Shown: positions 23,409-60,706 of the stretch, piece after piece
Layout of the letters: every line of letters begins with the position of its first letter
How positions within the stretch are numbered: position 1 is the first letter of the stretch
IMG/VR virus record: IMGVR_UViG_3300037042_006844
Span: 124,001 to 188,000 of that record
Length of the DNA stretch: 64,000 nt
Direction: 5' to 3' (one strand)
Program-made: the position numbers and the translations under genes
The notes under the pieces: model-generated
The model's database searches: none
What the model saw: only the letters and a program-made list of their open reading frames with translations
Told to the model about the DNA's origin: nothing

Positions 23409-24685
23409 GTCAATTGACACACGACCCTAAAGGGTCGGTGCTTGCCAGAGAAGAACCTCTGACGATTGGTTGATTGACAGCAACCTGTCCATCGAGTGCG
23501 GAGCACGAGATGGAGTGTTCTTTGTCATATCTAAAAGTGATATTGTTCGCAGCATTTAGGTCTGCGTCCAATACGACTTTATCAAGTCCATAATACCTAC
23601 ATCCTTTACGGACTCCGTTATCAAGACCACGATGGTCTAATTGGGATGTCCAGTGCGGATTAACGATGACCACTTGTTTTCCAAGTGATGCTGCCTTGTA
23701 GGTCAATATGTTCCTGAGAAGGAAATATGGCATTTGTGAATTGCGATTATTAAATCTTCGTCCTTTGAACTTGGATTTAATCTTGGTCAAATCCTCAATC
23801 ACAATGGTATTTGCCTTTGTGGTGAGAAGATGATTTACAACATTGTGTATGTAGTTCTTTGAAAAATGGTGTTCACGTCTGCGGAGTTTGGTTTGCTTAA
23901 CTCTGGTAGAATGTGATTTGTGAGATTGGAGTTTTCTCTTGTTCCAACGTATCTTACGTTTGGTTCGGTTAAACTCATTGCCTTTGATGATAATGCCTTC
24001 ACTGGTAGAAGCAAGTCGTTTGAGTCCCAAATCAACTCCAATACATTTTTTGTTGTCTTGGAATGTTGTGGTATCGTCAAATACAATAGAGAGGAACACT
24101 CTATCGTCTCTTACAAAAAGAGAAGGGTCTTTGAGTTTGTATTTTGAAAATAATTCGTTGACCTTATTATACTTGAGAAGTTTGGCAGTGATACGACCAT
24201 TACAAGTTGTCAGTTTAATGGCGTCTTGACCAATCCAAGTATAGATGCGAGTGTCCAGTTGGATGTTTAGTCGGTTTGTCTCAACTGGTTCTGTGATTTT
24301 ATGGCAATTGGAACGAAGAGATTTGTATTTTGCAACCACGTCTTGTTCTGCCTTAATGACAAACTGACTTGGAAGCATTGGAAGTTGTTCTCGAACCATC
24401 TTATAACATCTTTGGTGAAGAGGCATAAGACCATTACAGGACTTCATTCCAAATCGGATTTTAGATATGATATTGAAAGCATCACGTTTCAACGATAGTG
24501 ATTTGATGAGAGATTGTTTATCCTCATCATTTTCAAAAATCAGTTGAACATTGTATGTTTTCATTATTACTGGATATACATATTGTGAAGAAACAGAAAA
24601 CAACAAACTATTTTGAGAAAGTGAGATATTTTCGTTGCTCCTCCCCTACCCTAAAGGGATAGGGGTTTCCGCAACGAGTGAGAAT
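23409..24685 (-). mobile_element. IS200/IS605-family tnpB-only element
   Basis: end hairpins gaccctaaagggtc and cccctaccctaaagggatagggg; lies between promoter 23375-23402 and RNA ligase ATG. Confidence 0.85.
23410..24564 (-). CDS. tnpB: TnpB RNA-guided nuclease lacking the CxxC Zn finger
   Basis: RuvC GVDLG, IEDL, DADLNAA. Confidence 0.9.
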   Translation of the reverse strand: MKTYNVQLIFENDEDKQSLIKSLSLKRDAFNIISKIRFGMKSCNGLMPLHQRCYKMVREQLPMLPSQFVIKAEQDVVAKYKSLRSNCHKITEPVETNRLNIQLDTRIYTWIGQDAIKLTTCNGRITAKLLKYNKVNELFSKYKLKDPSLFVRDDRVFLSIVFDDTTTFQDNKKCIGVDLGLKRLASTSEGIIIKGNEFNRTKRKIRWNKRKLQSHKSHSTRVKQTKLRRREHHFSKNYIHNVVNHLLTTKANTIVIEDLTKIKSKFKGRRFNNRNSQMPYFLLRNILTYKAASLGKQVVIVNPHWTSQLDHRGLDNGVRKGCRYYGLDKVVLDADLNAANNITFRYDKEHSISCSALDGQVAVNQPIVRGSSLASTDPLGSCVN

Positions 24686-38713: not shown

Positions 38714-40111
38714 ATGAATAAAAACATCTGTTTAACTACTGACAGCTACAAGCTAAACCATTGGAATCAATACCCTCGTAACACCGAGATTGTGTATAGT
38801 TATTTCGAGTGTCGCAAAGGAGCAACCTTCGCCGAAACCCCGTTCTTCGGGCTTCAATACATTATTAAAAGCCACCTTGAGGGCGCAGTCGTGACCAGGG
38901 AGAATATTGAGAAGGCAGCTAGGCTTTGCAAATTCCATTTTGGCGACGAGCGTTACTTCAACCGTGAGGGCTGGGAATACATCCTCAATAATTGGGGAGG
39001 TAAACTTCCAGTCGTTATCAAGGCTGTTGAGGAGGGAACTGTGGTTCCGGTCAACAACGTGTTGATGACCATTGAGAATGTGGGCGGTGCCATGACGGCT
39101 TGGCTCACCAATTTCCTTGAGACGATTTTGTCCCAAGTATGGTATCCCACAACCGTTGCAGCTTTGAGCCGTGAGGTCAAAAAGAATATCAAAGAATATC
39201 TTGATTTAACCAGTGAGGGCGGACTGCTCAATTTCGGACTGCATGATTTTGGGTTCCGGGGGGCATCGTCTTGGGAATCTGCTGGTATTGGTGGTGCGGC
39301 TCATCTAATCAACTTCCTTGGCACCGATACTTTGGTCGCGATGGAGGTCGCCATGAACTATTACAATGCAAACCTCGAAGGATTAGCATACAGTGTGGCA
39401 GCAACCGAGCACAGTGTGATGACTGCTTTGGGCAAGGACGGTGAGGAAACGGTCGTCGAGAATCTGCTCAATGAATATCCCACGGGTATTCTTTCTGTGG
39501 TCTCCGATAGCTACGACATCTACAATTTTGTTAACAACATCGTTGGACGCAAATTTAAGGATTGGATTCTTGAGCGTGATGGTGTGTTCGTGGTTAGACC
39601 AGATTCCATTACTCCGAGCCATCCAACTCCTGAGCAGGAAATGGTTTGGATTATGTGGAGTCTTTGGGACAATTTTGGTGGCATTATAAACAGCAAGGGA
39701 TTTAATGTTATCAATCCCAAGGTTCGTGTTCTTTGGGGCGATGGAATCGATTTGGAAGGTATCAAAAAGATTCTGTGTGCTGTTGCCGATGCTGGATTTG
39801 CAACCGAAAATATCGCATGTTTCGGAATGGGTGGCGGACTCTTACAGAAAGTCAATCGTGATACACAGCGTTGTGCATTCAAATCGTCTGCACAGTATCG
39901 CAACGGTCAGTGGTTTGATATTTTCAAGAGTCCCAAGGATATTTCCAAGGCTTCCAAAAAGGGCAAGCTCAAGCTCACCAAGATTGACGGCAAGTTCGTT
40001 ACTGTTGGTGAAAACGATCCCGGTGAGGATTATTTGAAGGTTGTGTTTACGAATGGTGTGCTGGTCAAGGAAATTGACTTTGCAACCGTTCGCAAGAACG
40101 CTGCTCTATGA
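38714..40111 (+). CDS. nadV: nicotinamide phosphoribosyltransferase
   Basis: TDSYK, LHDFGFRG, ATEHS, SVVSDSYD, RPDS, GDGI, FGMGG.L. Confidence 0.95.
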   Translation: MNKNICLTTDSYKLNHWNQYPRNTEIVYSYFECRKGATFAETPFFGLQYIIKSHLEGAVVTRENIEKAARLCKFHFGDERYFNREGWEYILNNWGGKLPVVIKAVEEGTVVPVNNVLMTIENVGGAMTAWLTNFLETILSQVWYPTTVAALSREVKKNIKEYLDLTSEGGLLNFGLHDFGFRGASSWESAGIGGAAHLINFLGTDTLVAMEVAMNYYNANLEGLAYSVAATEHSVMTALGKDGEETVVENLLNEYPTGILSVVSDSYDIYNFVNNIVGRKFKDWILERDGVFVVRPDSITPSHPTPEQEMVWIMWSLWDNFGGIINSKGFNVINPKVRVLWGDGIDLEGIKKILCAVADAGFATENIACFGMGGGLLQKVNRDTQRCAFKSSAQYRNGQWFDIFKSPKDISKASKKGKLKLTKIDGKFVTVGENDPGEDYLKVVFTNGVLVKEIDFATVRKNAAL

Positions 40112-40977: not shown

Positions 40978-41958
40978 ATGAACGTGAACACTCTAAAGTT
41001 ATTTGCGGGAACCAGCAACGTTCCACTTGCTGAACGTATAGCTTCCAATTTTTTGAACTCCAAACTCGGCGATATTTTTCACCACAAATTTCCCAGCGGA
41101 GAAACATATTGCCAATTTCGTGAGAATATTCGTGGGTGTGATGTGTTTTTGATTCAAAGCATCACTGCTCCCGCCAACGAAAATTTGATGGAATTGTTGG
41201 TGATGGCGGATGCTGCTAGACGCGCCAGTGCAGACCGCATTACTGCAATCATTCCCTATTTTGGCTATGCCAGACAAGATAGAAAAGAGAAAAGCAGGGT
41301 GCCGATCACTGCCAAGCTCGTTTTGGACTTGATCGAAGCGAGCGGAATTGACCGTGTGGTAACTATGGATTTGCACAGTCCACAGGTCAGTGGCTTCACC
41401 AACCTTCCGTTCGACCATCTGACCTTTGAACCCGTATTGAACAATTGGATTAGAAACAAATACCATAGTTTGGCTTTGCGAGACAGTGTTATTTTGATGG
41501 CACCCGATGTTGGAGCCGTCAAACGTGTGGAAAAATACGCAACCACGCTTGGCACTGACTTTGGATTCATCAGCAAAAAGCGTGTGGGTGATGATACGGT
41601 TGAATTGCAAAGCATTGTTGGTGACGTGGCTGACAAGCACGTTGTTATCATCGATGATCTGACCGAGAGTTGCGGAACCATGATTCAAGCTGCCAAGGCT
41701 TGCAAACACAATGGAGCCAAAAATGTGACATGTGCGGTGACTCATGGAGCTTTCACGAATATTGGTGTGGAACGTTTGTGTGAAACATCCAGCATCGATC
41801 ATTTGGTTCACAGCAACACAGTGAATCATGCATGGGACACAAACATGGATATGTGCAAAGACCCTCGCAGCATCACACAGCTTGATGTCAGCATGTTGTT
41901 TGCCAAAGCAATCAGCAGCATTCACAACAACGAAAGCATCAGTGAATTATTTGTATGA
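40978..41958 (+). CDS. prs: ribose-phosphate pyrophosphokinase
   Basis: FPSGE, PYFGYARQDRK, DLHS, APDVG, IIDD..SCGT, THG. Confidence 0.95.
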   Translation: MNVNTLKLFAGTSNVPLAERIASNFLNSKLGDIFHHKFPSGETYCQFRENIRGCDVFLIQSITAPANENLMELLVMADAARRASADRITAIIPYFGYARQDRKEKSRVPITAKLVLDLIEASGIDRVVTMDLHSPQVSGFTNLPFDHLTFEPVLNNWIRNKYHSLALRDSVILMAPDVGAVKRVEKYATTLGTDFGFISKKRVGDDTVELQSIVGDVADKHVVIIDDLTESCGTMIQAAKACKHNGAKNVTCAVTHGAFTNIGVERLCETSSIDHLVHSNTVNHAWDTNMDMCKDPRSITQLDVSMLFAKAISSIHNNESISELFV

Positions 41959-42045
41959 TAGCAACATTTACTGATATATATTACCAGATACGCACATAAA
42001 AAGAAAGTGCTTGCAGTTTGATGGAACGGTGTTAAGATAGAAGTG

Positions 42046-42139
42046 TTGATGGTTCTTTGCATGGTGAGGGGAGCAGCCCTTCCAGAACATCTTTGAATGG
42101 CGGAGTCGCCTCGACCTAAAAATCGAATGCGACCATCGA
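42046..42139 (+). ncRNA. putative ~95-nt hairpin sRNA
   Basis: promoter TTGCAG-N16-TAAGAT at 42011-42038; nested pairings. Confidence 0.45.
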
Positions 42140-42148
42140 AAAGAACAG

Positions 42149-42177
42149 TTGACAGACAGAGCAAAGTCTGCTAAGAT
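42149..42177 (+). promoter_or_regulatory. tRNA array promoter
   Basis: TTGACA-N17-TAAGAT with TG extension. Confidence 0.75.
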
Positions 42178-42387: not shown

Positions 42388-42610
42388 GTCAGGTCAATAA
42401 TGACAGACCGTTAGCAATAAGCGGTGTCAATGTGCAAAAAAATTCAAGTGGTATAGCACATCTGACGTTATAGATTCCACTTGATGGTGGAGGGGCGCGG
42501 AATAGCCCCCTAGACAAACAGATTGACGGATTGATATAATCGAAGGATATTATATCTAATGCAACAGATAAATCCGATATAATGGTTTGTCGAGAGTTTG
42601 ACATAACTCT
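42388..42610 (+). ncRNA. unknown multi-stem pseudoknotted RNA
   Basis: at least 8 helices including 8-bp loop pairing tcaagtgg/ccacttga. Confidence 0.6.
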
Positions 42611-42623
42611 ACAACAACATATG

Positions 42624-42699
42624 TCTGGTTGCGGGGATGAGCCAATGGTGTCTCGGTTATCCGATTGGATCGAGATTCAATAACCCTACAATCGGACCA
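42624..42699 (+). ncRNA. tRNA-sized CCA-ended non-cloverleaf RNA
   Basis: ctggttg/caatcgg stem + ACCA; no T-arm. Confidence 0.5.
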
Positions 42700-42709
42700 A
42701 TTTTATAAT

Positions 42710-42786
42710 TGCGGAATAGAGTTCTGGTGAACTCCGGTGTCTCATAAGCACTCGCTAGAAAAGTTCGATTCTTTTTTCCGCTACCA
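42710..42786 (+). tRNA. tRNA-Met(CAT), partly initiator-like
   Basis: ct-cat-aa loop; 1:72 mismatch; lacks 3 G-C anticodon-stem pairs. Confidence 0.8.
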
Positions 42787-42791
42787 ATTTC

Positions 42792-42885
42792 GGTTCTGTA
42801 GTTTAACTGGTAAAACCCCATACTTATAATATGGTAATCGCTAGATGTGCGTGACTTCTCGGTTCGAATCCGAGCAGAACCACCA
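42792..42885 (+). tRNA. tRNA-Ile(TAT) with long variable arm
   Basis: ccata-ct-tat-aa-tatgg, ~23-nt V region, GGTTCGAATCC, ACCA. Confidence 0.8.
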
Positions 42886-42949: not shown

Positions 42950-43276
42950 ATGAAAAAGATACTTCTAACAGTTGCAACCCTCTCTCTTCTTTTGACCGCT
43001 AGTGCGGTTGATACCAAGGAACTCTACGATTCACAATGCTCCAAGTGTCATGGAACAAATGGCAATGGTGTGACCAAGATGGGTCAAAAGCTCAATGCGA
43101 AGGATTGGACCGATGTCAAGATTCAAGCCGCAATGACCGAGACCAACATGGTCAAGGCAATTAAGGTGGGCATTAAAGATGCCGAGGACAAGACTCGCAT
43201 GAAGGCATATTCAGATATGACTGATGCCGATGTGACGAATTTGGTTACGTATATCAAAACCTTCAAAAAGCAATAA
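42950..43276 (+). CDS. class I c-type cytochrome, exported
   Basis: signal peptide, CSKCH, distal RMKAY Met. Confidence 0.9.
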   Translation: MKKILLTVATLSLLLTASAVDTKELYDSQCSKCHGTNGNGVTKMGQKLNAKDWTDVKIQAAMTETNMVKAIKVGIKDAEDKTRMKAYSDMTDADVTNLVTYIKTFKKQ

Positions 43277-43294
43277 CATCGTATATAACATCGT

Positions 43295-43624
43295 ATGAAG
43301 AAATCATTGATGCTCGGGGTTTTGATTCTCAGCGGAATGTTGTGTCAAGCACAAAACGCTGGAACCAACGAATTGTATAACAGCAAGTGCAGCAAGTGCC
43401 ATGCAAAAGATGGCTCGGGCAACACACTGATGGGCAAAAAGTATAGTGCGAAAAACTATACAGATGCAGCCGTCCAAAACAAGCTTACTGATGAAGCTTT
43501 TGATAAGTCCCTCAAAGAGGGTTACACCGATGCCGAAGGCAAGAAAGTAATGCAGGCTTTTCCAGAGCTTACGGCACTGGAGCGCAAGGAACTCATCAAA
43601 ACGATGCGGTCCTTCAAGAAATAA
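43295..43624 (+). CDS. class I c-type cytochrome, exported (paralog)
   Basis: signal peptide, CSKCH, distal VMQAF Met. Confidence 0.9.
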   Translation: MKKSLMLGVLILSGMLCQAQNAGTNELYNSKCSKCHAKDGSGNTLMGKKYSAKNYTDAAVQNKLTDEAFDKSLKEGYTDAEGKKVMQAFPELTALERKELIKTMRSFKK

Positions 43625-59405: not shown

Positions 59406-60706
59406 ATGAACTACCCACCTGCTAAAGCAGGTGGGTTTCCACCGCAATAGTTATGAGTTTCTATCGGGTAGTTCCTACCCGTATTAAACGTTGTCTTTGG
59501 AAATGAGAAGTCCAAGATATTCTTGGCAGCATTCACATCTCTATCGTGTTTCTCATTACAATCTGGGCAAGTCCATTCTCTATCATTTAATGTAAGAGAA
59601 TGATTAACATATCCACAATGAGAACACGTCTTACTGGATGGTTCAAATCTACCTATTTTTAGGAAGTTCTTACCATACCAGTCGCTTTTATATTGGAGCA
59701 TATTTACAAATTTTCCCCAAGCATAATCTCCTATGAGTTTATTAGTTGGTGAATAGTTGTTCTTCTGCATCCCCCGAATGGTTAAATCCTCAATACAGAT
59801 ATTACCAATTTGGTTATCATTGGTTAGTTTGTATGAGAGTTTATCCAAGAAATCTTTGCGTTGTCTTGTTATTTTAGAATGGAGTTTGGTTATCTGCTCT
59901 TGCTTGGAGATATGAGCAGTAGAACCTTTAGTGAGTTGCTCCAAATCCTGTTGGTGTTTAGTAAGTTTATCAGCAGATTGTTTCAATACCTTCGGGTTCT
60001 CAATCTTTGTTCCATCATTCAGAGTAAGAAATGTTTTTACTCCAAAATCTATTCCTATTGCTTTATCCTTTTTTGGTGTTGGTTTCTTTGATAGTTCTTT
60101 TTCAACCTCTACAAGAATGGAAACATAGTATCGTTTATCTCTGTCTTGGGATACGATTGCTTGTTTAATCGTTCCTTCTGCTTGTCGGTCAAAGATACAT
60201 TTAATGCCTCCACGAAACTTTGGAATGACTAATCGCTTTCCATCATAGTTCAACTTAATGTTGTTATTAGTCATTGGGACAACGAACGATTTACGAGCAT
60301 ACTTCTTCGACTTAAACTTTGGAAATCCAGCATTGGAACGAAAGAAGGAAGTATATGCTCTATCCAAGTTGAGGATGGATTGCTGTAGCGATTGAGAACC
60401 TATCTCACTCAACCATTCATTTGTCTTTTTCAACTTTGGAAGTTCAGTTGCCATATCCTGCCAGTTCAATGTTTTCTTGGTTTCTTTGTAATGCTTAATC
60501 TTTACTTCAAGGAAATGGTTGTATATCCATCGGCAGTGTCCAAAATGCTTGGACAAAAGAACCTCTTGTTCCTTGGTAGGATATATTCTGTATTTGTAAG
60601 CAACGTTATACATTCTACAACATACATATCATTCACTTTCTAAAAACGATTAATTATTTTTCAATGGGTCGCATTCATCCCATATGGGGTTTCTGCTCCC
60701 TCAAAG
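59406..60706 (-). mobile_element. IS200/IS605-family tnpB-only element
   Basis: right-end hairpin acccacctgctaaagcaggtgggt; shortened left-end hairpin at 60665-60706. Confidence 0.88.
59411..60613 (-). CDS. tnpB: TnpB RNA-guided nuclease
   Basis: AYKYRIYP HTH, GIDFG, IEDL, CSHC/CPDC, DRDVNAA. Confidence 0.95.
   Translation of the reverse strand: MYNVAYKYRIYPTKEQEVLLSKHFGHCRWIYNHFLEVKIKHYKETKKTLNWQDMATELPKLKKTNEWLSEIGSQSLQQSILNLDRAYTSFFRSNAGFPKFKSKKYARKSFVVPMTNNNIKLNYDGKRLVIPKFRGGIKCIFDRQAEGTIKQAIVSQDRDKRYYVSILVEVEKELSKKPTPKKDKAIGIDFGVKTFLTLNDGTKIENPKVLKQSADKLTKHQQDLEQLTKGSTAHISKQEQITKLHSKITRQRKDFLDKLSYKLTNDNQIGNICIEDLTIRGMQKNNYSPTNKLIGDYAWGKFVNMLQYKSDWYGKNFLKIGRFEPSSKTCSHCGYVNHSLTLNDREWTCPDCNEKHDRDVNAAKNILDFSFPKTTFNTGRNYPIETHNYCGGNPPALAGG

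What the first reader, a model, noticed from the sequence alone, without database searches (positions are those of the whole stretch)
42624..42699. tRNA-length RNA with acceptor-like stem and CCA but no cloverleaf
Seen: ctggttgcgggg pairs with ccctacaatcgg, followed by ACCA and the same att(t) trailer as neighbouring tRNAs. The interior has tctcg/cgaga and atcc/ggat stems and no T-loop. Inference: a tRNA mimic or decoy (e.g. for anticodon nucleases), or the 3' domain of the upstream RNA.
Basis: partly seen in the sequence, partly recalled or inferred. Interest (0 to 1): 0.6.

Follow-up and report, generated by a model that had tools for sequence, protein, structure and literature searches.

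The report
Pseudoknotted RNA in phage tRNA operon
The flagged 76 bases are not a tRNA or an obvious tRNA decoy but the 3' half of a conserved, doubly pseudoknotted non-coding RNA that T4-like giant phages carry between their tRNA-Glu and tRNA-Met genes; it weakly resembles the little-understood wcaG RNA of cyanophages and its function is unknown.

Summary
But ARAGORN and Rfam see no tRNA, and the 76-nt fold is no more stable than shuffled sequence (z -0.96).

I found homologues in 22 uncultivated T4-like jumbo-phage contigs. They always lie in the order tRNA-Lys, tRNA-Glu, element, tRNA-Met, tRNA-Ile(UAU).

Across 15 distinct sequences the conserved fold is two H-type pseudoknots. They flank a single-stranded block, UGGUUGCGGGG, that was identical in the three lineages found without using it as a search term.
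- 97% of pair cells are paired, 12 pairs change on both sides, and 0 of 500 shuffles reach this.
- 27 G-U against 3 A-C cells place the RNA on the tRNA strand.

Its 3' strand instead pairs with the loop of the tctcg/cgaga hairpin. The CCA is absent from most sequences, including the largest clade. The CAAUUU trailer is shared with the neighbouring tRNAs.

A frame-shifting indel rules out the overlapping 33-codon ORF.

The upstream hairpins plus the first pseudoknot match Rfam wcaG below threshold (32-33 bits against 42). Canonical wcaG also sits beside tRNA genes in cyanophages.

Function is unknown. I rate it a new variant of a known kind.

The parts
42444..42484 (+). Hairpin H0 (UCAAGUGG ... 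CCACUUGA). It matches the position of the first hairpin of the wcaG-like 5' module.
   Evidence: Read from the sequence. Relatives have a hairpin of different sequence at the same place just before UGGUGGAGGG. It aligns to hairpin 1 of Rfam wcaG in L094. It is absent in L097 and L106.
42485..42514 (+). UGGUGGAGGGGC-loop-GCCCCCUAGA: conserved linker UGGUG plus hairpin H1 (GGGGC 42492-96 with GCCCC 42505-09).
   Evidence: Conserved in L065 and the family. RNAalifold predicts this helix, and 2 of its pairs change on both sides. It aligns to the UGGUGCGGA linker and hairpin 2 of wcaG.
42511..42540 (+). Promoter-like site TAGACA-N18-TATAAT (11 of 12 matches, with a TG extension). It lies in an insertion of about 80 nt (42515-42590) found only in the window lineage.
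   Evidence: Relatives lack the insertion. This is a consensus match only, not shown to be active.
42593..42625 (+). Pseudoknot PK-A. S1a is AGAGU 42593-97 with ACUCU 42606-10. S2a is GACAU 42600-04 with AUGUC 42621-25. The A-rich third loop is 42611-20.
   Evidence: S2a has four different complementary versions in the family: GGAAGU/ACUUCU, GGAAAU/AUUUCU, GACAU/AUGUC and ACAACG/CGUUGU. RNAalifold finds S2a independently. S1a never varies within the family, so covariation cannot test it. Canonical wcaG has CUGG/CCAG at the same place.
42626..42636 (+). Block UGGUUGCGGGG between the two pseudoknots.
   Evidence: Identical in the three lineages found without using it as a search term: the window, L065 through a neighbouring protein, and L085 through the tRNA-Ile pattern. 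It is the exact reverse complement of CCCCGCAACCA, the last 11 nt of the phage initiator-type tRNA-Met in L090. It aligns to the conserved 3' tail GUGGCGAGCC of wcaG.
42637..42649 (+). Variable 5-8 nt followed by conserved AUGGU (42645-49). This resembles a tRNA D-loop.
   Evidence: AUGGU was present in the three independently found lineages.
42651..42696 (+). Pseudoknot PK-B. S1b is UCUCGGUU 42651-58 with GAUCGAGA 42668-75. S2b is UCCGAUUG 42660-67 with CAAUCGGA 42689-96. The third loop is 42676-88 and contains UUCAAUAA.
   Evidence: At least 6 different complementary versions exist for each stem. S2b is paired in 100% of cells and 5 of its pairs change on both sides. S1b is paired in 93% and 4 of its pairs change on both sides. 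S2b duplexes are -8 to -13.6 kcal/mol in every lineage. RNAalifold finds S2b independently.
42697..42704 (+). 3' tail CCA plus trailer AUUUU, the probable processing site shared with the tRNAs.
   Evidence: CAAUUU follows the element in the three independently found lineages. 59 of 79 distinct tRNAs in related loci have CCA+A0-3UUU. CCA itself is present in only some lineages. That it is a processing site is an inference.
42625..42636 (+). It is an alternative pairing specific to this lineage.
   Evidence: In the window this duplex (-14.7 kcal/mol) competes with S2b (-11.9). In all other lineages it is only -3 to -6 kcal/mol.

Best explanation
Window 42593-42704 (+ strand) is a non-coding RNA module of about 112 nt, and the flagged 76 nt are its 3' two-thirds. 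It is not a tRNA.

It folds into two H-type pseudoknots, PK-A and PK-B, which hold an 11-nt segment, UGGUUGCGGGG, between them.

Together with two upstream hairpins (42444-42514) it forms a wcaG-like RNA that carries an extra 3' pseudoknot domain. This RNA lies inside the tRNA operon of T4-like jumbo phages, always after tRNA-Glu(UUC) and before tRNA-Met(CAU).

Inferred, not shown:
- It is transcribed with the tRNAs. In this phage it may also have its own promoter at 42511-40.
- It is cut out at the same A/U-rich CAAUUU trailers as the tRNAs, giving a compact, nuclease-resistant stable RNA.
- It acts in trans by presenting the conserved single-stranded block, together with the other two UGGU motifs, to a partner.
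- The most concrete candidate partner is the 3' end of an initiator-type tRNA-Met, whose last 11 nt are the exact complement. A protein partner is equally open.

The confidence of 0.6 covers the whole statement. My own rough split is: about 0.9 that this is a conserved structured RNA with two pseudoknots, about 0.55 that it is related to wcaG, and about 0.25 or less for the trans-acting mechanism.
For: - Homologues occur in 22 phage contigs with fixed gene order.
- The search pattern gave 20 hits in IMG/VR. In 596 Gb of genomes it gave only 7 hits, all unrelated by model score (<=16 bits against 76-141).
- Double pseudoknot: 97% of 369 cells paired, 12 pairs with changes on both sides, 0 of 500 shuffles as good, slid controls 34-55%.
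- RNAalifold recovers S2a and S2b on its own.
- 27 G-U against 3 A-C cells place the RNA on the tRNA strand.
- A 1-nt indel (CCAAUGG against CCAUGG) between conserved blocks shifts the frame of the 33-codon ORF.
- wcaG (RF01761) matches at 33 and 32 bits, covering H0, H1, the PK-A hairpin and the block.
- Canonical wcaG lies 48 nt before tRNA-Met in cyanophage S-CREM1 and 19 nt before tRNA-Gly in S-CAM1.
- The phage is T4-like: rIIA, rIIB, Rnl1, DNA ligase, td.
- The trailer is shared with the tRNAs.
- The block is complementary to the 3' end of tRNA-fMet.
Against: - There are no expression or end-mapping data, so the transcript boundaries are inferred.
- 20 of the 22 homologues were retrieved with a pattern that fixes 22 positions. 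Invariance of the block, of AUGGU and of CAAUUU therefore rests on only three independently found lineages.
- The wcaG match is below Rfam's threshold and was seen in only 2 lineages. The window itself gives no wcaG hit.
- The model of the 3' part finds nothing in canonical wcaG loci.
- Complementarity to the tRNA-fMet 3' end is partly expected if the block derives from the 5' strand of that tRNA's acceptor stem.
- The block does not change where the phage tRNA has U72 instead of A72.
- No such tRNA lies within the 64-kb window.
Confidence: 0.6

Rival explanations
1. A tRNA mimic or decoy: a 76-nt RNA with a 7-12-bp acceptor-like stem and a 3' ACCA. It would be cut by RNase P, perhaps charged or CCA-repaired, and would act as bait for tRNA-targeting nucleases.
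For: - In the window the closing stem is the lowest-energy fold and is stronger than S2b (-14.7 against -11.9 kcal/mol).
- The outer 7 pairs are possible in 86.7% of cells, with one change on both sides, U-A to C-G.
- An NCCA tail is present in the window, L090, L095, L102 and L107. L065 has a CCA but no unpaired base before it.
- The element is weakly similar to tRNA-fMet.
Against: - No tRNA-like family match.
- The inner 5 pairs are specific to the window.
- In all other lineages the stem is worth -3 to -6 kcal/mol against -8 to -13.6 for the competing S2b, which covaries.
- No conserved 7-nt anticodon-type loop: the loop is 9-14 nt and variable.
- CCA is absent in the largest clade and in L085.
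Confidence: 0.1
2. A cis-acting switch or attenuator for the downstream tRNA-Met. The 3' strand toggles between S2b (pseudoknot plus U-run, acting like a terminator) and the 5' block, perhaps in response to a ligand or to uncharged tRNA. wcaG has been listed as a riboswitch candidate.
For: - The element is upstream of tRNA-Met in 19 of 22 loci.
- Two mutually exclusive pairings exist for the same 3' strand.
- A U-run follows S2b.
- wcaG is listed as a riboswitch candidate (PMC2864571).
Against: - The U-run starts 4-5 nt after the stem. The same trailer follows most tRNAs, which evidently do not terminate the operon.
- The distance to tRNA-Met varies from 7 to about 950 nt. In two of the loci without a called tRNA-Met (L103, L106) the next called tRNA is Ile.
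- The alternative pairing is weak outside the window lineage.
Confidence: 0.15
3. A decaying, functionless pseudogene of tRNA-Met.
For: - Best alignment is to the phages' initiator-type tRNA-Met (z 2.9-4.9).
- It lies next to tRNA-Met genes.
- A T-loop-like UUCAAUAA and a D-loop-like AUGGU are present.
Against: - Compensatory changes maintain three helices (S2a, S1b, S2b) that do not exist in a tRNA.
- The 11-nt block is identical in lineages whose real tRNA-Lys and tRNA-Glu have diverged considerably.
Confidence: 0.04
4. A 33-codon protein gene (42584-42685), or a DNA-level promoter (TTGACA 42598-603, N16, TATGTC 42620-25) rather than an RNA.
For: - An open frame is present in the window.
- TTGACA-N16/17-TATGNN is present in the window and in L085.
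Against: - A frame-shifting indel lies between conserved blocks, and the TAA of UCAAUAA falls in different frames.
- Most lineages have TTGGAA and no -10 box.
- G-U pairs and covariation point to an RNA.
Confidence: 0.03

Closest known systems
wcaG RNA motif (Rfam RF01761; Weinberg et al. 2010, PMC2864571)
   Same: - Found in T4-like phages.
- Three consecutive hairpins joined by UGGUG-type linkers and followed by a conserved UGG(C/U)G... tail.
- Full-length model alignment at 32-33 bits.
- A possible pseudoknot between the linker before hairpin 3 and that hairpin's loop: CUGG/CCAG there, AGAG/CUCU here.
- Located next to tRNA genes in cyanophages.
- Function unknown in both.
   Different: - Score is below the gathering threshold of 42 bits, and the window copy is not detected at all.
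- The family here has an additional 3' domain of about 70 nt (block, AUGGU, PK-B) that is absent from the four canonical wcaG loci searched, from cyanophages S-CREM1, S-PM2, syn9 and S-CAM1.
- The hosts of these phages are unknown, and the phages are uncultivated jumbo phages rather than marine cyanophages.
Phage T4 stable RNAs species 1 and 2 (rnaC, rnaD)
   Same: - Small RNAs of 119-139 nt with unknown function, encoded in the tRNA cluster of a T4-type phage directly after a tRNA.
- rnaD ends in CACCA followed by AAUU.
- Presumably released by the tRNA-processing machinery (general knowledge, not tested here).
   Different: No sequence or structure match: the model scores 12 bits or less on the T4 locus, and no match falls on rnaC or rnaD. 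rnaC keeps a canonical T arm, which the element here lacks.
tRNA-like structures at the 3' ends of plant RNA viruses (such as TYMV), and tmRNA
   Same: An H-type pseudoknot in which the strand just before a 3' (N)CCA pairs with the loop of an upstream hairpin, as in the pseudoknotted acceptor arm of TYMV (textbook knowledge). tmRNA combines tRNA-like parts with pseudoknots.
   Different: - No Rfam match to Tymo_tRNA-like or tmRNA at the element.
- The two stems stack to 16 bp rather than 12.
- CCA is not conserved.
- There is no T arm, no tag reading frame, and no evidence of aminoacylation.
T-box riboswitch discriminator (UGGN pairing with the tRNA NCCA end)
   Same: Single-stranded UGGU motifs lie directly next to helix ends, and there are three per RNA. 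The phage tRNAs mostly end in ACCA.
   Different: No Stem I or specifier loop, no antiterminator/terminator architecture and no downstream coding gene. The resemblance is recalled from knowledge and was not tested.

Membership tests
tRNA | Cloverleaf detected by ARAGORN or the Rfam tRNA model (RF00005, 29 bits). | tested here: not met
   No call at 42624-42699 by ARAGORN or by Rfam at E<=10. The five flanking tRNAs are all called by ARAGORN, and four of them by Rfam's tRNA model.
tRNA | A conserved 7-bp acceptor stem formed by the 5' and 3' ends. | tested here: inconclusive
   The outer 7 pairs are possible in 86.7% of cells, but the 5' strand is invariant (one exception at its first base), so covariation cannot test them. 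They are weak (-3 to -6 kcal/mol) outside the window lineage, and the same 3' strand forms the covarying S2b.
tRNA | Anticodon arm with a 7-nt loop, and a T arm. | tested here: not met
   The only hairpin has an 8-bp stem and a variable 9-14-nt loop. There is no T stem, only a UUCAAUAA sequence.
tRNA-like 3' end | An encoded (N)CCA at the 3' end in all members. | tested here: not met
   CCA is present in the window, L065, L090, L095, L102 and L107. The largest clade has ACAAUUU and L085 has AUCAAUUU.
tmRNA | tRNA-like domain with a T arm, plus a tag reading frame, detected by ARAGORN or RF00023. | tested here: not met
   No tmRNA call. The same tools do find a real tmRNA in relative L095. No reading frame is conserved.
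wcaG RNA (RF01761) | Rfam gathering score of 42 bits. | tested here: not met
   33.0 bits in L094 (E 1.2e-4 in 331 nt) and 32.0 bits in L091. There is no hit in the window. Canonical S-CREM1 scores 92.7 bits.
wcaG RNA (RF01761) | Three hairpins in order, with conserved linkers (UGGUGCGGA, CCUGGUUUC) and the tail GUGGCGAGCC. | tested here: inconclusive
   All three hairpins and UGGUG-type linkers align over the full model, positions 1-98. The linker and loop sequences differ: UGGUGGA, CCUAGAGUU and UGGUUGCGGGG.
wcaG RNA (RF01761) | Occurrence in T4-like phages. | tested here: met
   The window encodes rIIA, rIIB, Rnl1, DNA ligase and td. Canonical wcaG occurs in 70 cyanophage records.
H-type pseudoknot | Two helices in which a hairpin loop pairs with a downstream strand, supported by covariation. 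| tested here: met
   For PK-A and PK-B together, 97% of cells are paired, 12 pairs change on both sides, and 0 of 500 shuffles do as well. The 4-bp S1a of PK-A never varies, so PK-A rests on the covarying S2a.

The most novel reading that the evidence does not exclude
The RNA could be a phage-encoded sensor or sponge for tRNA 3' ends. Its three helix-flanked UGGU motifs would pair with the ACCA tails of uncharged tRNAs, as in a T-box. The block UGGUUGCGGGG, held open between two pseudoknots, would capture the last 11 nt (CCCCGCAACCA) of initiator tRNA-fMet. That would let the phage titrate, protect or monitor initiator tRNA during infection. If so, it would also suggest a ligand class for the orphan wcaG riboswitch candidate.
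Probability: 0.1. Interest if true: 0.85.

Novelty: new variant of a known kind. Interest (0 to 1): 0.6.

Why it matters
Phage tRNA islands keep turning up ornate RNAs of unknown function: T4 rnaC and rnaD, and GOLLD, manA and wcaG.

This case adds a covariation-supported double-pseudoknot RNA with a strikingly conserved single-stranded 11-mer. It ties that RNA, tentatively, to the orphan wcaG motif.

It also shows that canonical wcaG itself sits next to tRNA genes. That shifts wcaG from a presumed 5'-UTR regulator of polysaccharide genes towards an RNA connected with tRNA biology.

The exact complementarity of the 11-mer to the 3' end of initiator tRNA gives a concrete hypothesis that can be tested at the bench.

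For annotation, it is a warning that a tRNA-sized, CCA-ended stretch in a tRNA array need not be a tRNA or a tRNA mimic.

Tried and rejected
- **First exact-pattern scan of IMG/VR.** It found nothing. Later I saw that a storage boundary at window 42628/9 split the pattern in the window's own contig, so that blank was uninformative for the self-match.
- **blastn of the region against cultured phages.** Only tRNA hits came back. No isolate carries the element at a level blastn can detect.
- **Relatives found through PRPP synthetase in IMG/VR.** They have no tRNAs nearby and no similarity to the region. Closer relatives came from the large protein collection.
- **Loci found through the downstream 810-aa protein and the tRNA-Met anticodon arm.** These gave unrelated phages.
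- **Metagenome scan.** It returned L071 plus chance hits. L073 and L077 share a 21-nt pattern but score nothing with the model and look like unrelated intergenic DNA.
- **The 17-mer hit L069.** A chance match in GC-rich coding DNA.
- **Seven genome-contig hits.** All are chance matches.
- **Small ORF, promoter-only and minus-strand readings.** Rejected on the indel, the lack of conservation, and the 27 G-U against 3 A-C cells.
- **T4 rnaC and rnaD.** No homology.
- **Catalogue of candidate structured RNAs in IMG/VR (PMC10690425).** I could not check whether it contains this motif, because no supplements are held.
- **Mixed alignment of family and canonical wcaG sequences.** It gave no consensus structure.

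Full report
**1. Setting**

The window is part of IMGVR_UViG_3300037042_006844, a 303.6-kb uncultivated phage. It encodes rIIA, rIIB, an Rnl1-type RNA ligase, DNA ligase and thymidylate synthase, so it is a T4-like jumbo phage. NAMPT and PRPP synthetase lie just upstream of the finding, and two cytochrome c genes lie just downstream.

ARAGORN finds these tRNAs:

| tRNA | Coordinates |
|---|---|
| Lys(UUU) | 42213-87 |
| Glu(UUC) | 42304-79 |
| Met(CAU) | 42710-86 |
| Ile(UAU) | 42792-885 |
| Met(CAU) | 43725-800 |

The finding lies in the 330-nt gap between tRNA-Glu and the first tRNA-Met.

**2. The observation**

The stretch 42625-36 can pair with 42684-95 (8 Watson-Crick, 3 G-U, 1 mismatch), followed by ACCA and AUUUU.

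However:
- Neither ARAGORN nor Rfam, even at E<=10, reports a tRNA, tmRNA or tRNA-like element there.
- The fold of the 76 nt is unremarkable: z -0.96, and 29 of 200 shuffles fold as well.

Taken alone, the window sequence gives no more than chance would.

**3. Homologues**

- Near-identical strains (L063, L064) carry an identical copy.
- A relative with 84%-identical PRPP synthetase (L065, also seen as L066, L067 and L071) has the same tRNA order and a diverged copy.
- A third lineage (L085) came from a pattern in the unusual long-armed tRNA-Ile(UAU).
- These three share TGGTTGCGGGG, ATGGT and CAATTT. A pattern built from those blocks found 20 IMG/VR contigs, one of them L085 again.
- The same pattern found only 7 stretches in 596 Gb of bacterial and archaeal genomes. 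None of them scores with the family model: <=16 bits against 76-141 bits for family members.
- In every phage locus the element follows tRNA-Glu(UUC). In 19 of 22 loci a tRNA-Met(CAU) follows it, and tRNA-Ile(UAU) comes next wherever the fetched stretch reaches that far.

Caveat: 20 of the 22 homologues were selected with the three blocks fixed. Their invariance is therefore shown only by the three independently found lineages.

**4. Structure**

On a MAFFT alignment of 15 distinct sequences (A4) the conserved fold is two H-type pseudoknots.

In window coordinates:

| Helix | 5' strand | 3' strand |
|---|---|---|
| PK-A S1a | 42593-97 | 42606-10 |
| PK-A S2a | 42600-04 | 42621-25 |
| PK-B S1b | 42651-58 | 42668-75 |
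| PK-B S2b | 42660-67 | 42689-96 |

Support:
- 97.0% of 369 cells are paired, against 86.3% in shuffles (0 of 500 reach the observed value).
- 12 pairs change on both sides.
- Slid controls give 34-55%.
- S2b and S1b each occur in at least six different complementary versions, and S2a in four.
- S1a (4 bp) never varies, so covariation neither supports nor contradicts it.
- RNAalifold, which knows nothing of my model, recovers S2a and S2b.
- 27 G-U cells against 3 A-C cells show that the RNA is made from the + strand, like the tRNAs.

Between the pseudoknots lie the block UGGUUGCGGGG (42626-36), a variable 5-8 nt, and AUGGU. The third loop of PK-B carries UUCAAUAA.

**5.

Its 5' strand is the conserved block. 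Its 3' strand is the S2b strand plus part of the third loop, and that region varies freely.
- Over the family the 12 pairs are formed in 61.7% of cells, and the inner five almost only in the window.
- The outer seven are possible in 86.7% of cells (slid controls 25-51%). That cannot be separated from chance by covariation, because the G/U-only 5' strand barely changes.
- Energetically the closing duplex rivals S2b only in the window: -14.7 against -11.9 kcal/mol. Elsewhere it is -3 to -6 against -8 to -13.6.

So the acceptor-like stem is at best an alternative conformer specific to this lineage.

CCA is encoded in the window, L065, L090, L095, L102 and L107. The largest clade has ACAAUUU and L085 has AUCA. 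The CAAUUU trailer, in contrast, is shared with the tRNAs: 59 of 79 distinct tRNA genes have CCA+A0-3UUU. I read it as a common processing signal. That is an inference from what is known of RNase E-type cleavage in A/U-rich tRNA trailers.

**6. Not a protein, not a promoter**

The 33-codon ORF (42584-42685) is broken by a 1-nt indel between conserved blocks. The TAA inside UCAAUAA falls in different frames in different lineages.

A TTGACA-N16/17-TATGNN promoter look-alike exists only in the window and L085.

**7. What lies upstream**

In most relatives PK-A is directly preceded by two features:
- a variable hairpin (H0);
- UGGUGGAGGG-hairpin-CCCCUAGAG (H1).

The window has both at 42444-42514. 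They are separated from PK-A by an insertion of about 80 nt, specific to this lineage, that contains a strong promoter look-alike. L097 and L106 lack H0 and H1, so the core is PK-A, block and PK-B.

Rfam's wcaG model (RF01761) aligns end to end to H0, the UGGUG linker, H1, the PK-A hairpin and the block. It scores 33.0 bits in L094 and 32.0 bits in L091, below the 42-bit threshold.

wcaG is a riboswitch candidate of unknown function from marine metagenomes and T4-like cyanophages (PMC2864571). In cyanophage S-CREM1 the canonical wcaG RNA (92.7 bits) lies in the tRNA cluster 48 nt before a tRNA-Met. In S-CAM1 it lies 19 nt before tRNA-Gly. In syn9 and S-PM2 it precedes protein genes.

Canonical wcaG can form CUGG/CCAG where this family forms AGAG/CUCU. 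The 3' domain (block to tail) has no counterpart in the canonical loci.

I therefore call the RNA wcaG-like with an added 3' pseudoknot domain, not a wcaG member.

**8. tRNA ancestry and the 11-mer**

The 3' domain aligns better with the phages' initiator-type tRNA-Met than with other tRNAs: z 2.9-4.9 against about 0-3. An example is L090 4775-4851, UGCGGGGUGGAGCAGCCUGGUA...GGUUCAAAUCC...CCCCGCAACCA.

The block is the exact reverse complement of that tRNA's last 11 nt. Other lineages have 10 of 11.
- Seven of the eleven are expected if the block descends from the 5' strand of the acceptor stem.
- The extra UGGU, opposite ACCA, is not expected on that basis, and UGGU recurs three times in the RNA next to helix ends.
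- On the other hand, the block also aligns to the conserved tail of wcaG.

Ancestry and partner therefore both remain open.

**9. Function**

Nothing here shows function. My best reading is a stable, processed, trans-acting RNA of the tRNA island that displays a conserved single strand between two pseudoknots.

The most testable partner is the 3' end of initiator tRNA. A protein partner, or a cis-acting switch on tRNA-Met transcription, are alternatives. The variable distance to tRNA-Met, from 7 to about 950 nt, speaks against simple attenuation.

No match exists in cultured phages or to T4 rnaC and rnaD. I found no paper describing the element.

**10. Verdict**

- The tRNA-decoy interpretation is not supported.
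- The reading as the 3' domain of the upstream RNA is supported.
- The element is a real, conserved structured RNA and a new variant of a known kind: wcaG-type RNAs of phage tRNA islands.

Noticed in passing
window 42792-42885: tRNA-Ile(UAU) is 94 nt long, with a 21-nt variable arm. Its sequence UAAUCGCUAGAU is conserved in 8 IMG/VR contigs. A long-armed Ile tRNA is unusual.
   Followed up: partly
window 42044-42150: A further conserved structured element lies between two promoter-like TTGxxx-N17-TAAGAT boxes (42012-40 and 42149-77). It is conserved in L065 6900-7005, with a compensatory change in its closing stem (GAUGGU/ACCAUC against UCGGU/ACCGA). It carries UGGUGAGGGG and UGGCGGAG motifs like the wcaG linkers. 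Rfam has no hit for it.
   Followed up: partly
window 42710-42786: This tRNA-Met(CAU) is called only by ARAGORN. Rfam's tRNA model is silent and tRNA-Sec gives 30.9 bits. It has a U1/U72 mismatch and an A/U-rich T stem.
   Followed up: no
L071 7635-7710: A relative's tRNA island carries a tRNA with anticodon CUA, which ARAGORN labels Pyl. It is a possible amber suppressor.
   Followed up: no
L107 8285-8748; L095 1678-2077: The tRNA islands of related phages also hold a GOLLD RNA (203 bits), just upstream of the tRNA-Glu that precedes the element, and a tmRNA (142 bits).
   Followed up: no
L116 2246-2343 (S-CREM1); L119 1201-1303 (S-CAM1): Canonical wcaG RNAs lie directly upstream of tRNA genes: 48 nt before tRNA-Met and 19 nt before tRNA-Gly. 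They can also form a CUGG/CCAG pseudoknot that the Rfam structure does not show. This sits awkwardly with their annotation as 5'-UTR regulators.
   Followed up: partly
window 42950-43276 and 43295-43624: Two small cytochrome c genes with hydrophobic, signal-peptide-like N-termini (judged by eye from the DNA) sit inside the phage tRNA island, next to the NAD-salvage genes NAMPT (38714-40111) and PRPP synthetase (40978-41958). Only the window's own contig was found with this cytochrome in IMG/VR.
   Followed up: no
window 23410-24606 (-) and 59411-60613 (-): Two transposase ORFs of family phrog_506 lie in the phage genome.
   Followed up: no
L027 7093-7531: By eye this unrelated phage locus has a tmRNA-like gene (GGGGGCGUUACGGAAUCGAC ... 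GGUUCGAAUCCUCGCCGCCUCCACCA), along with several CCA-ended tRNA-like stretches that ARAGORN did not list.
   Followed up: no
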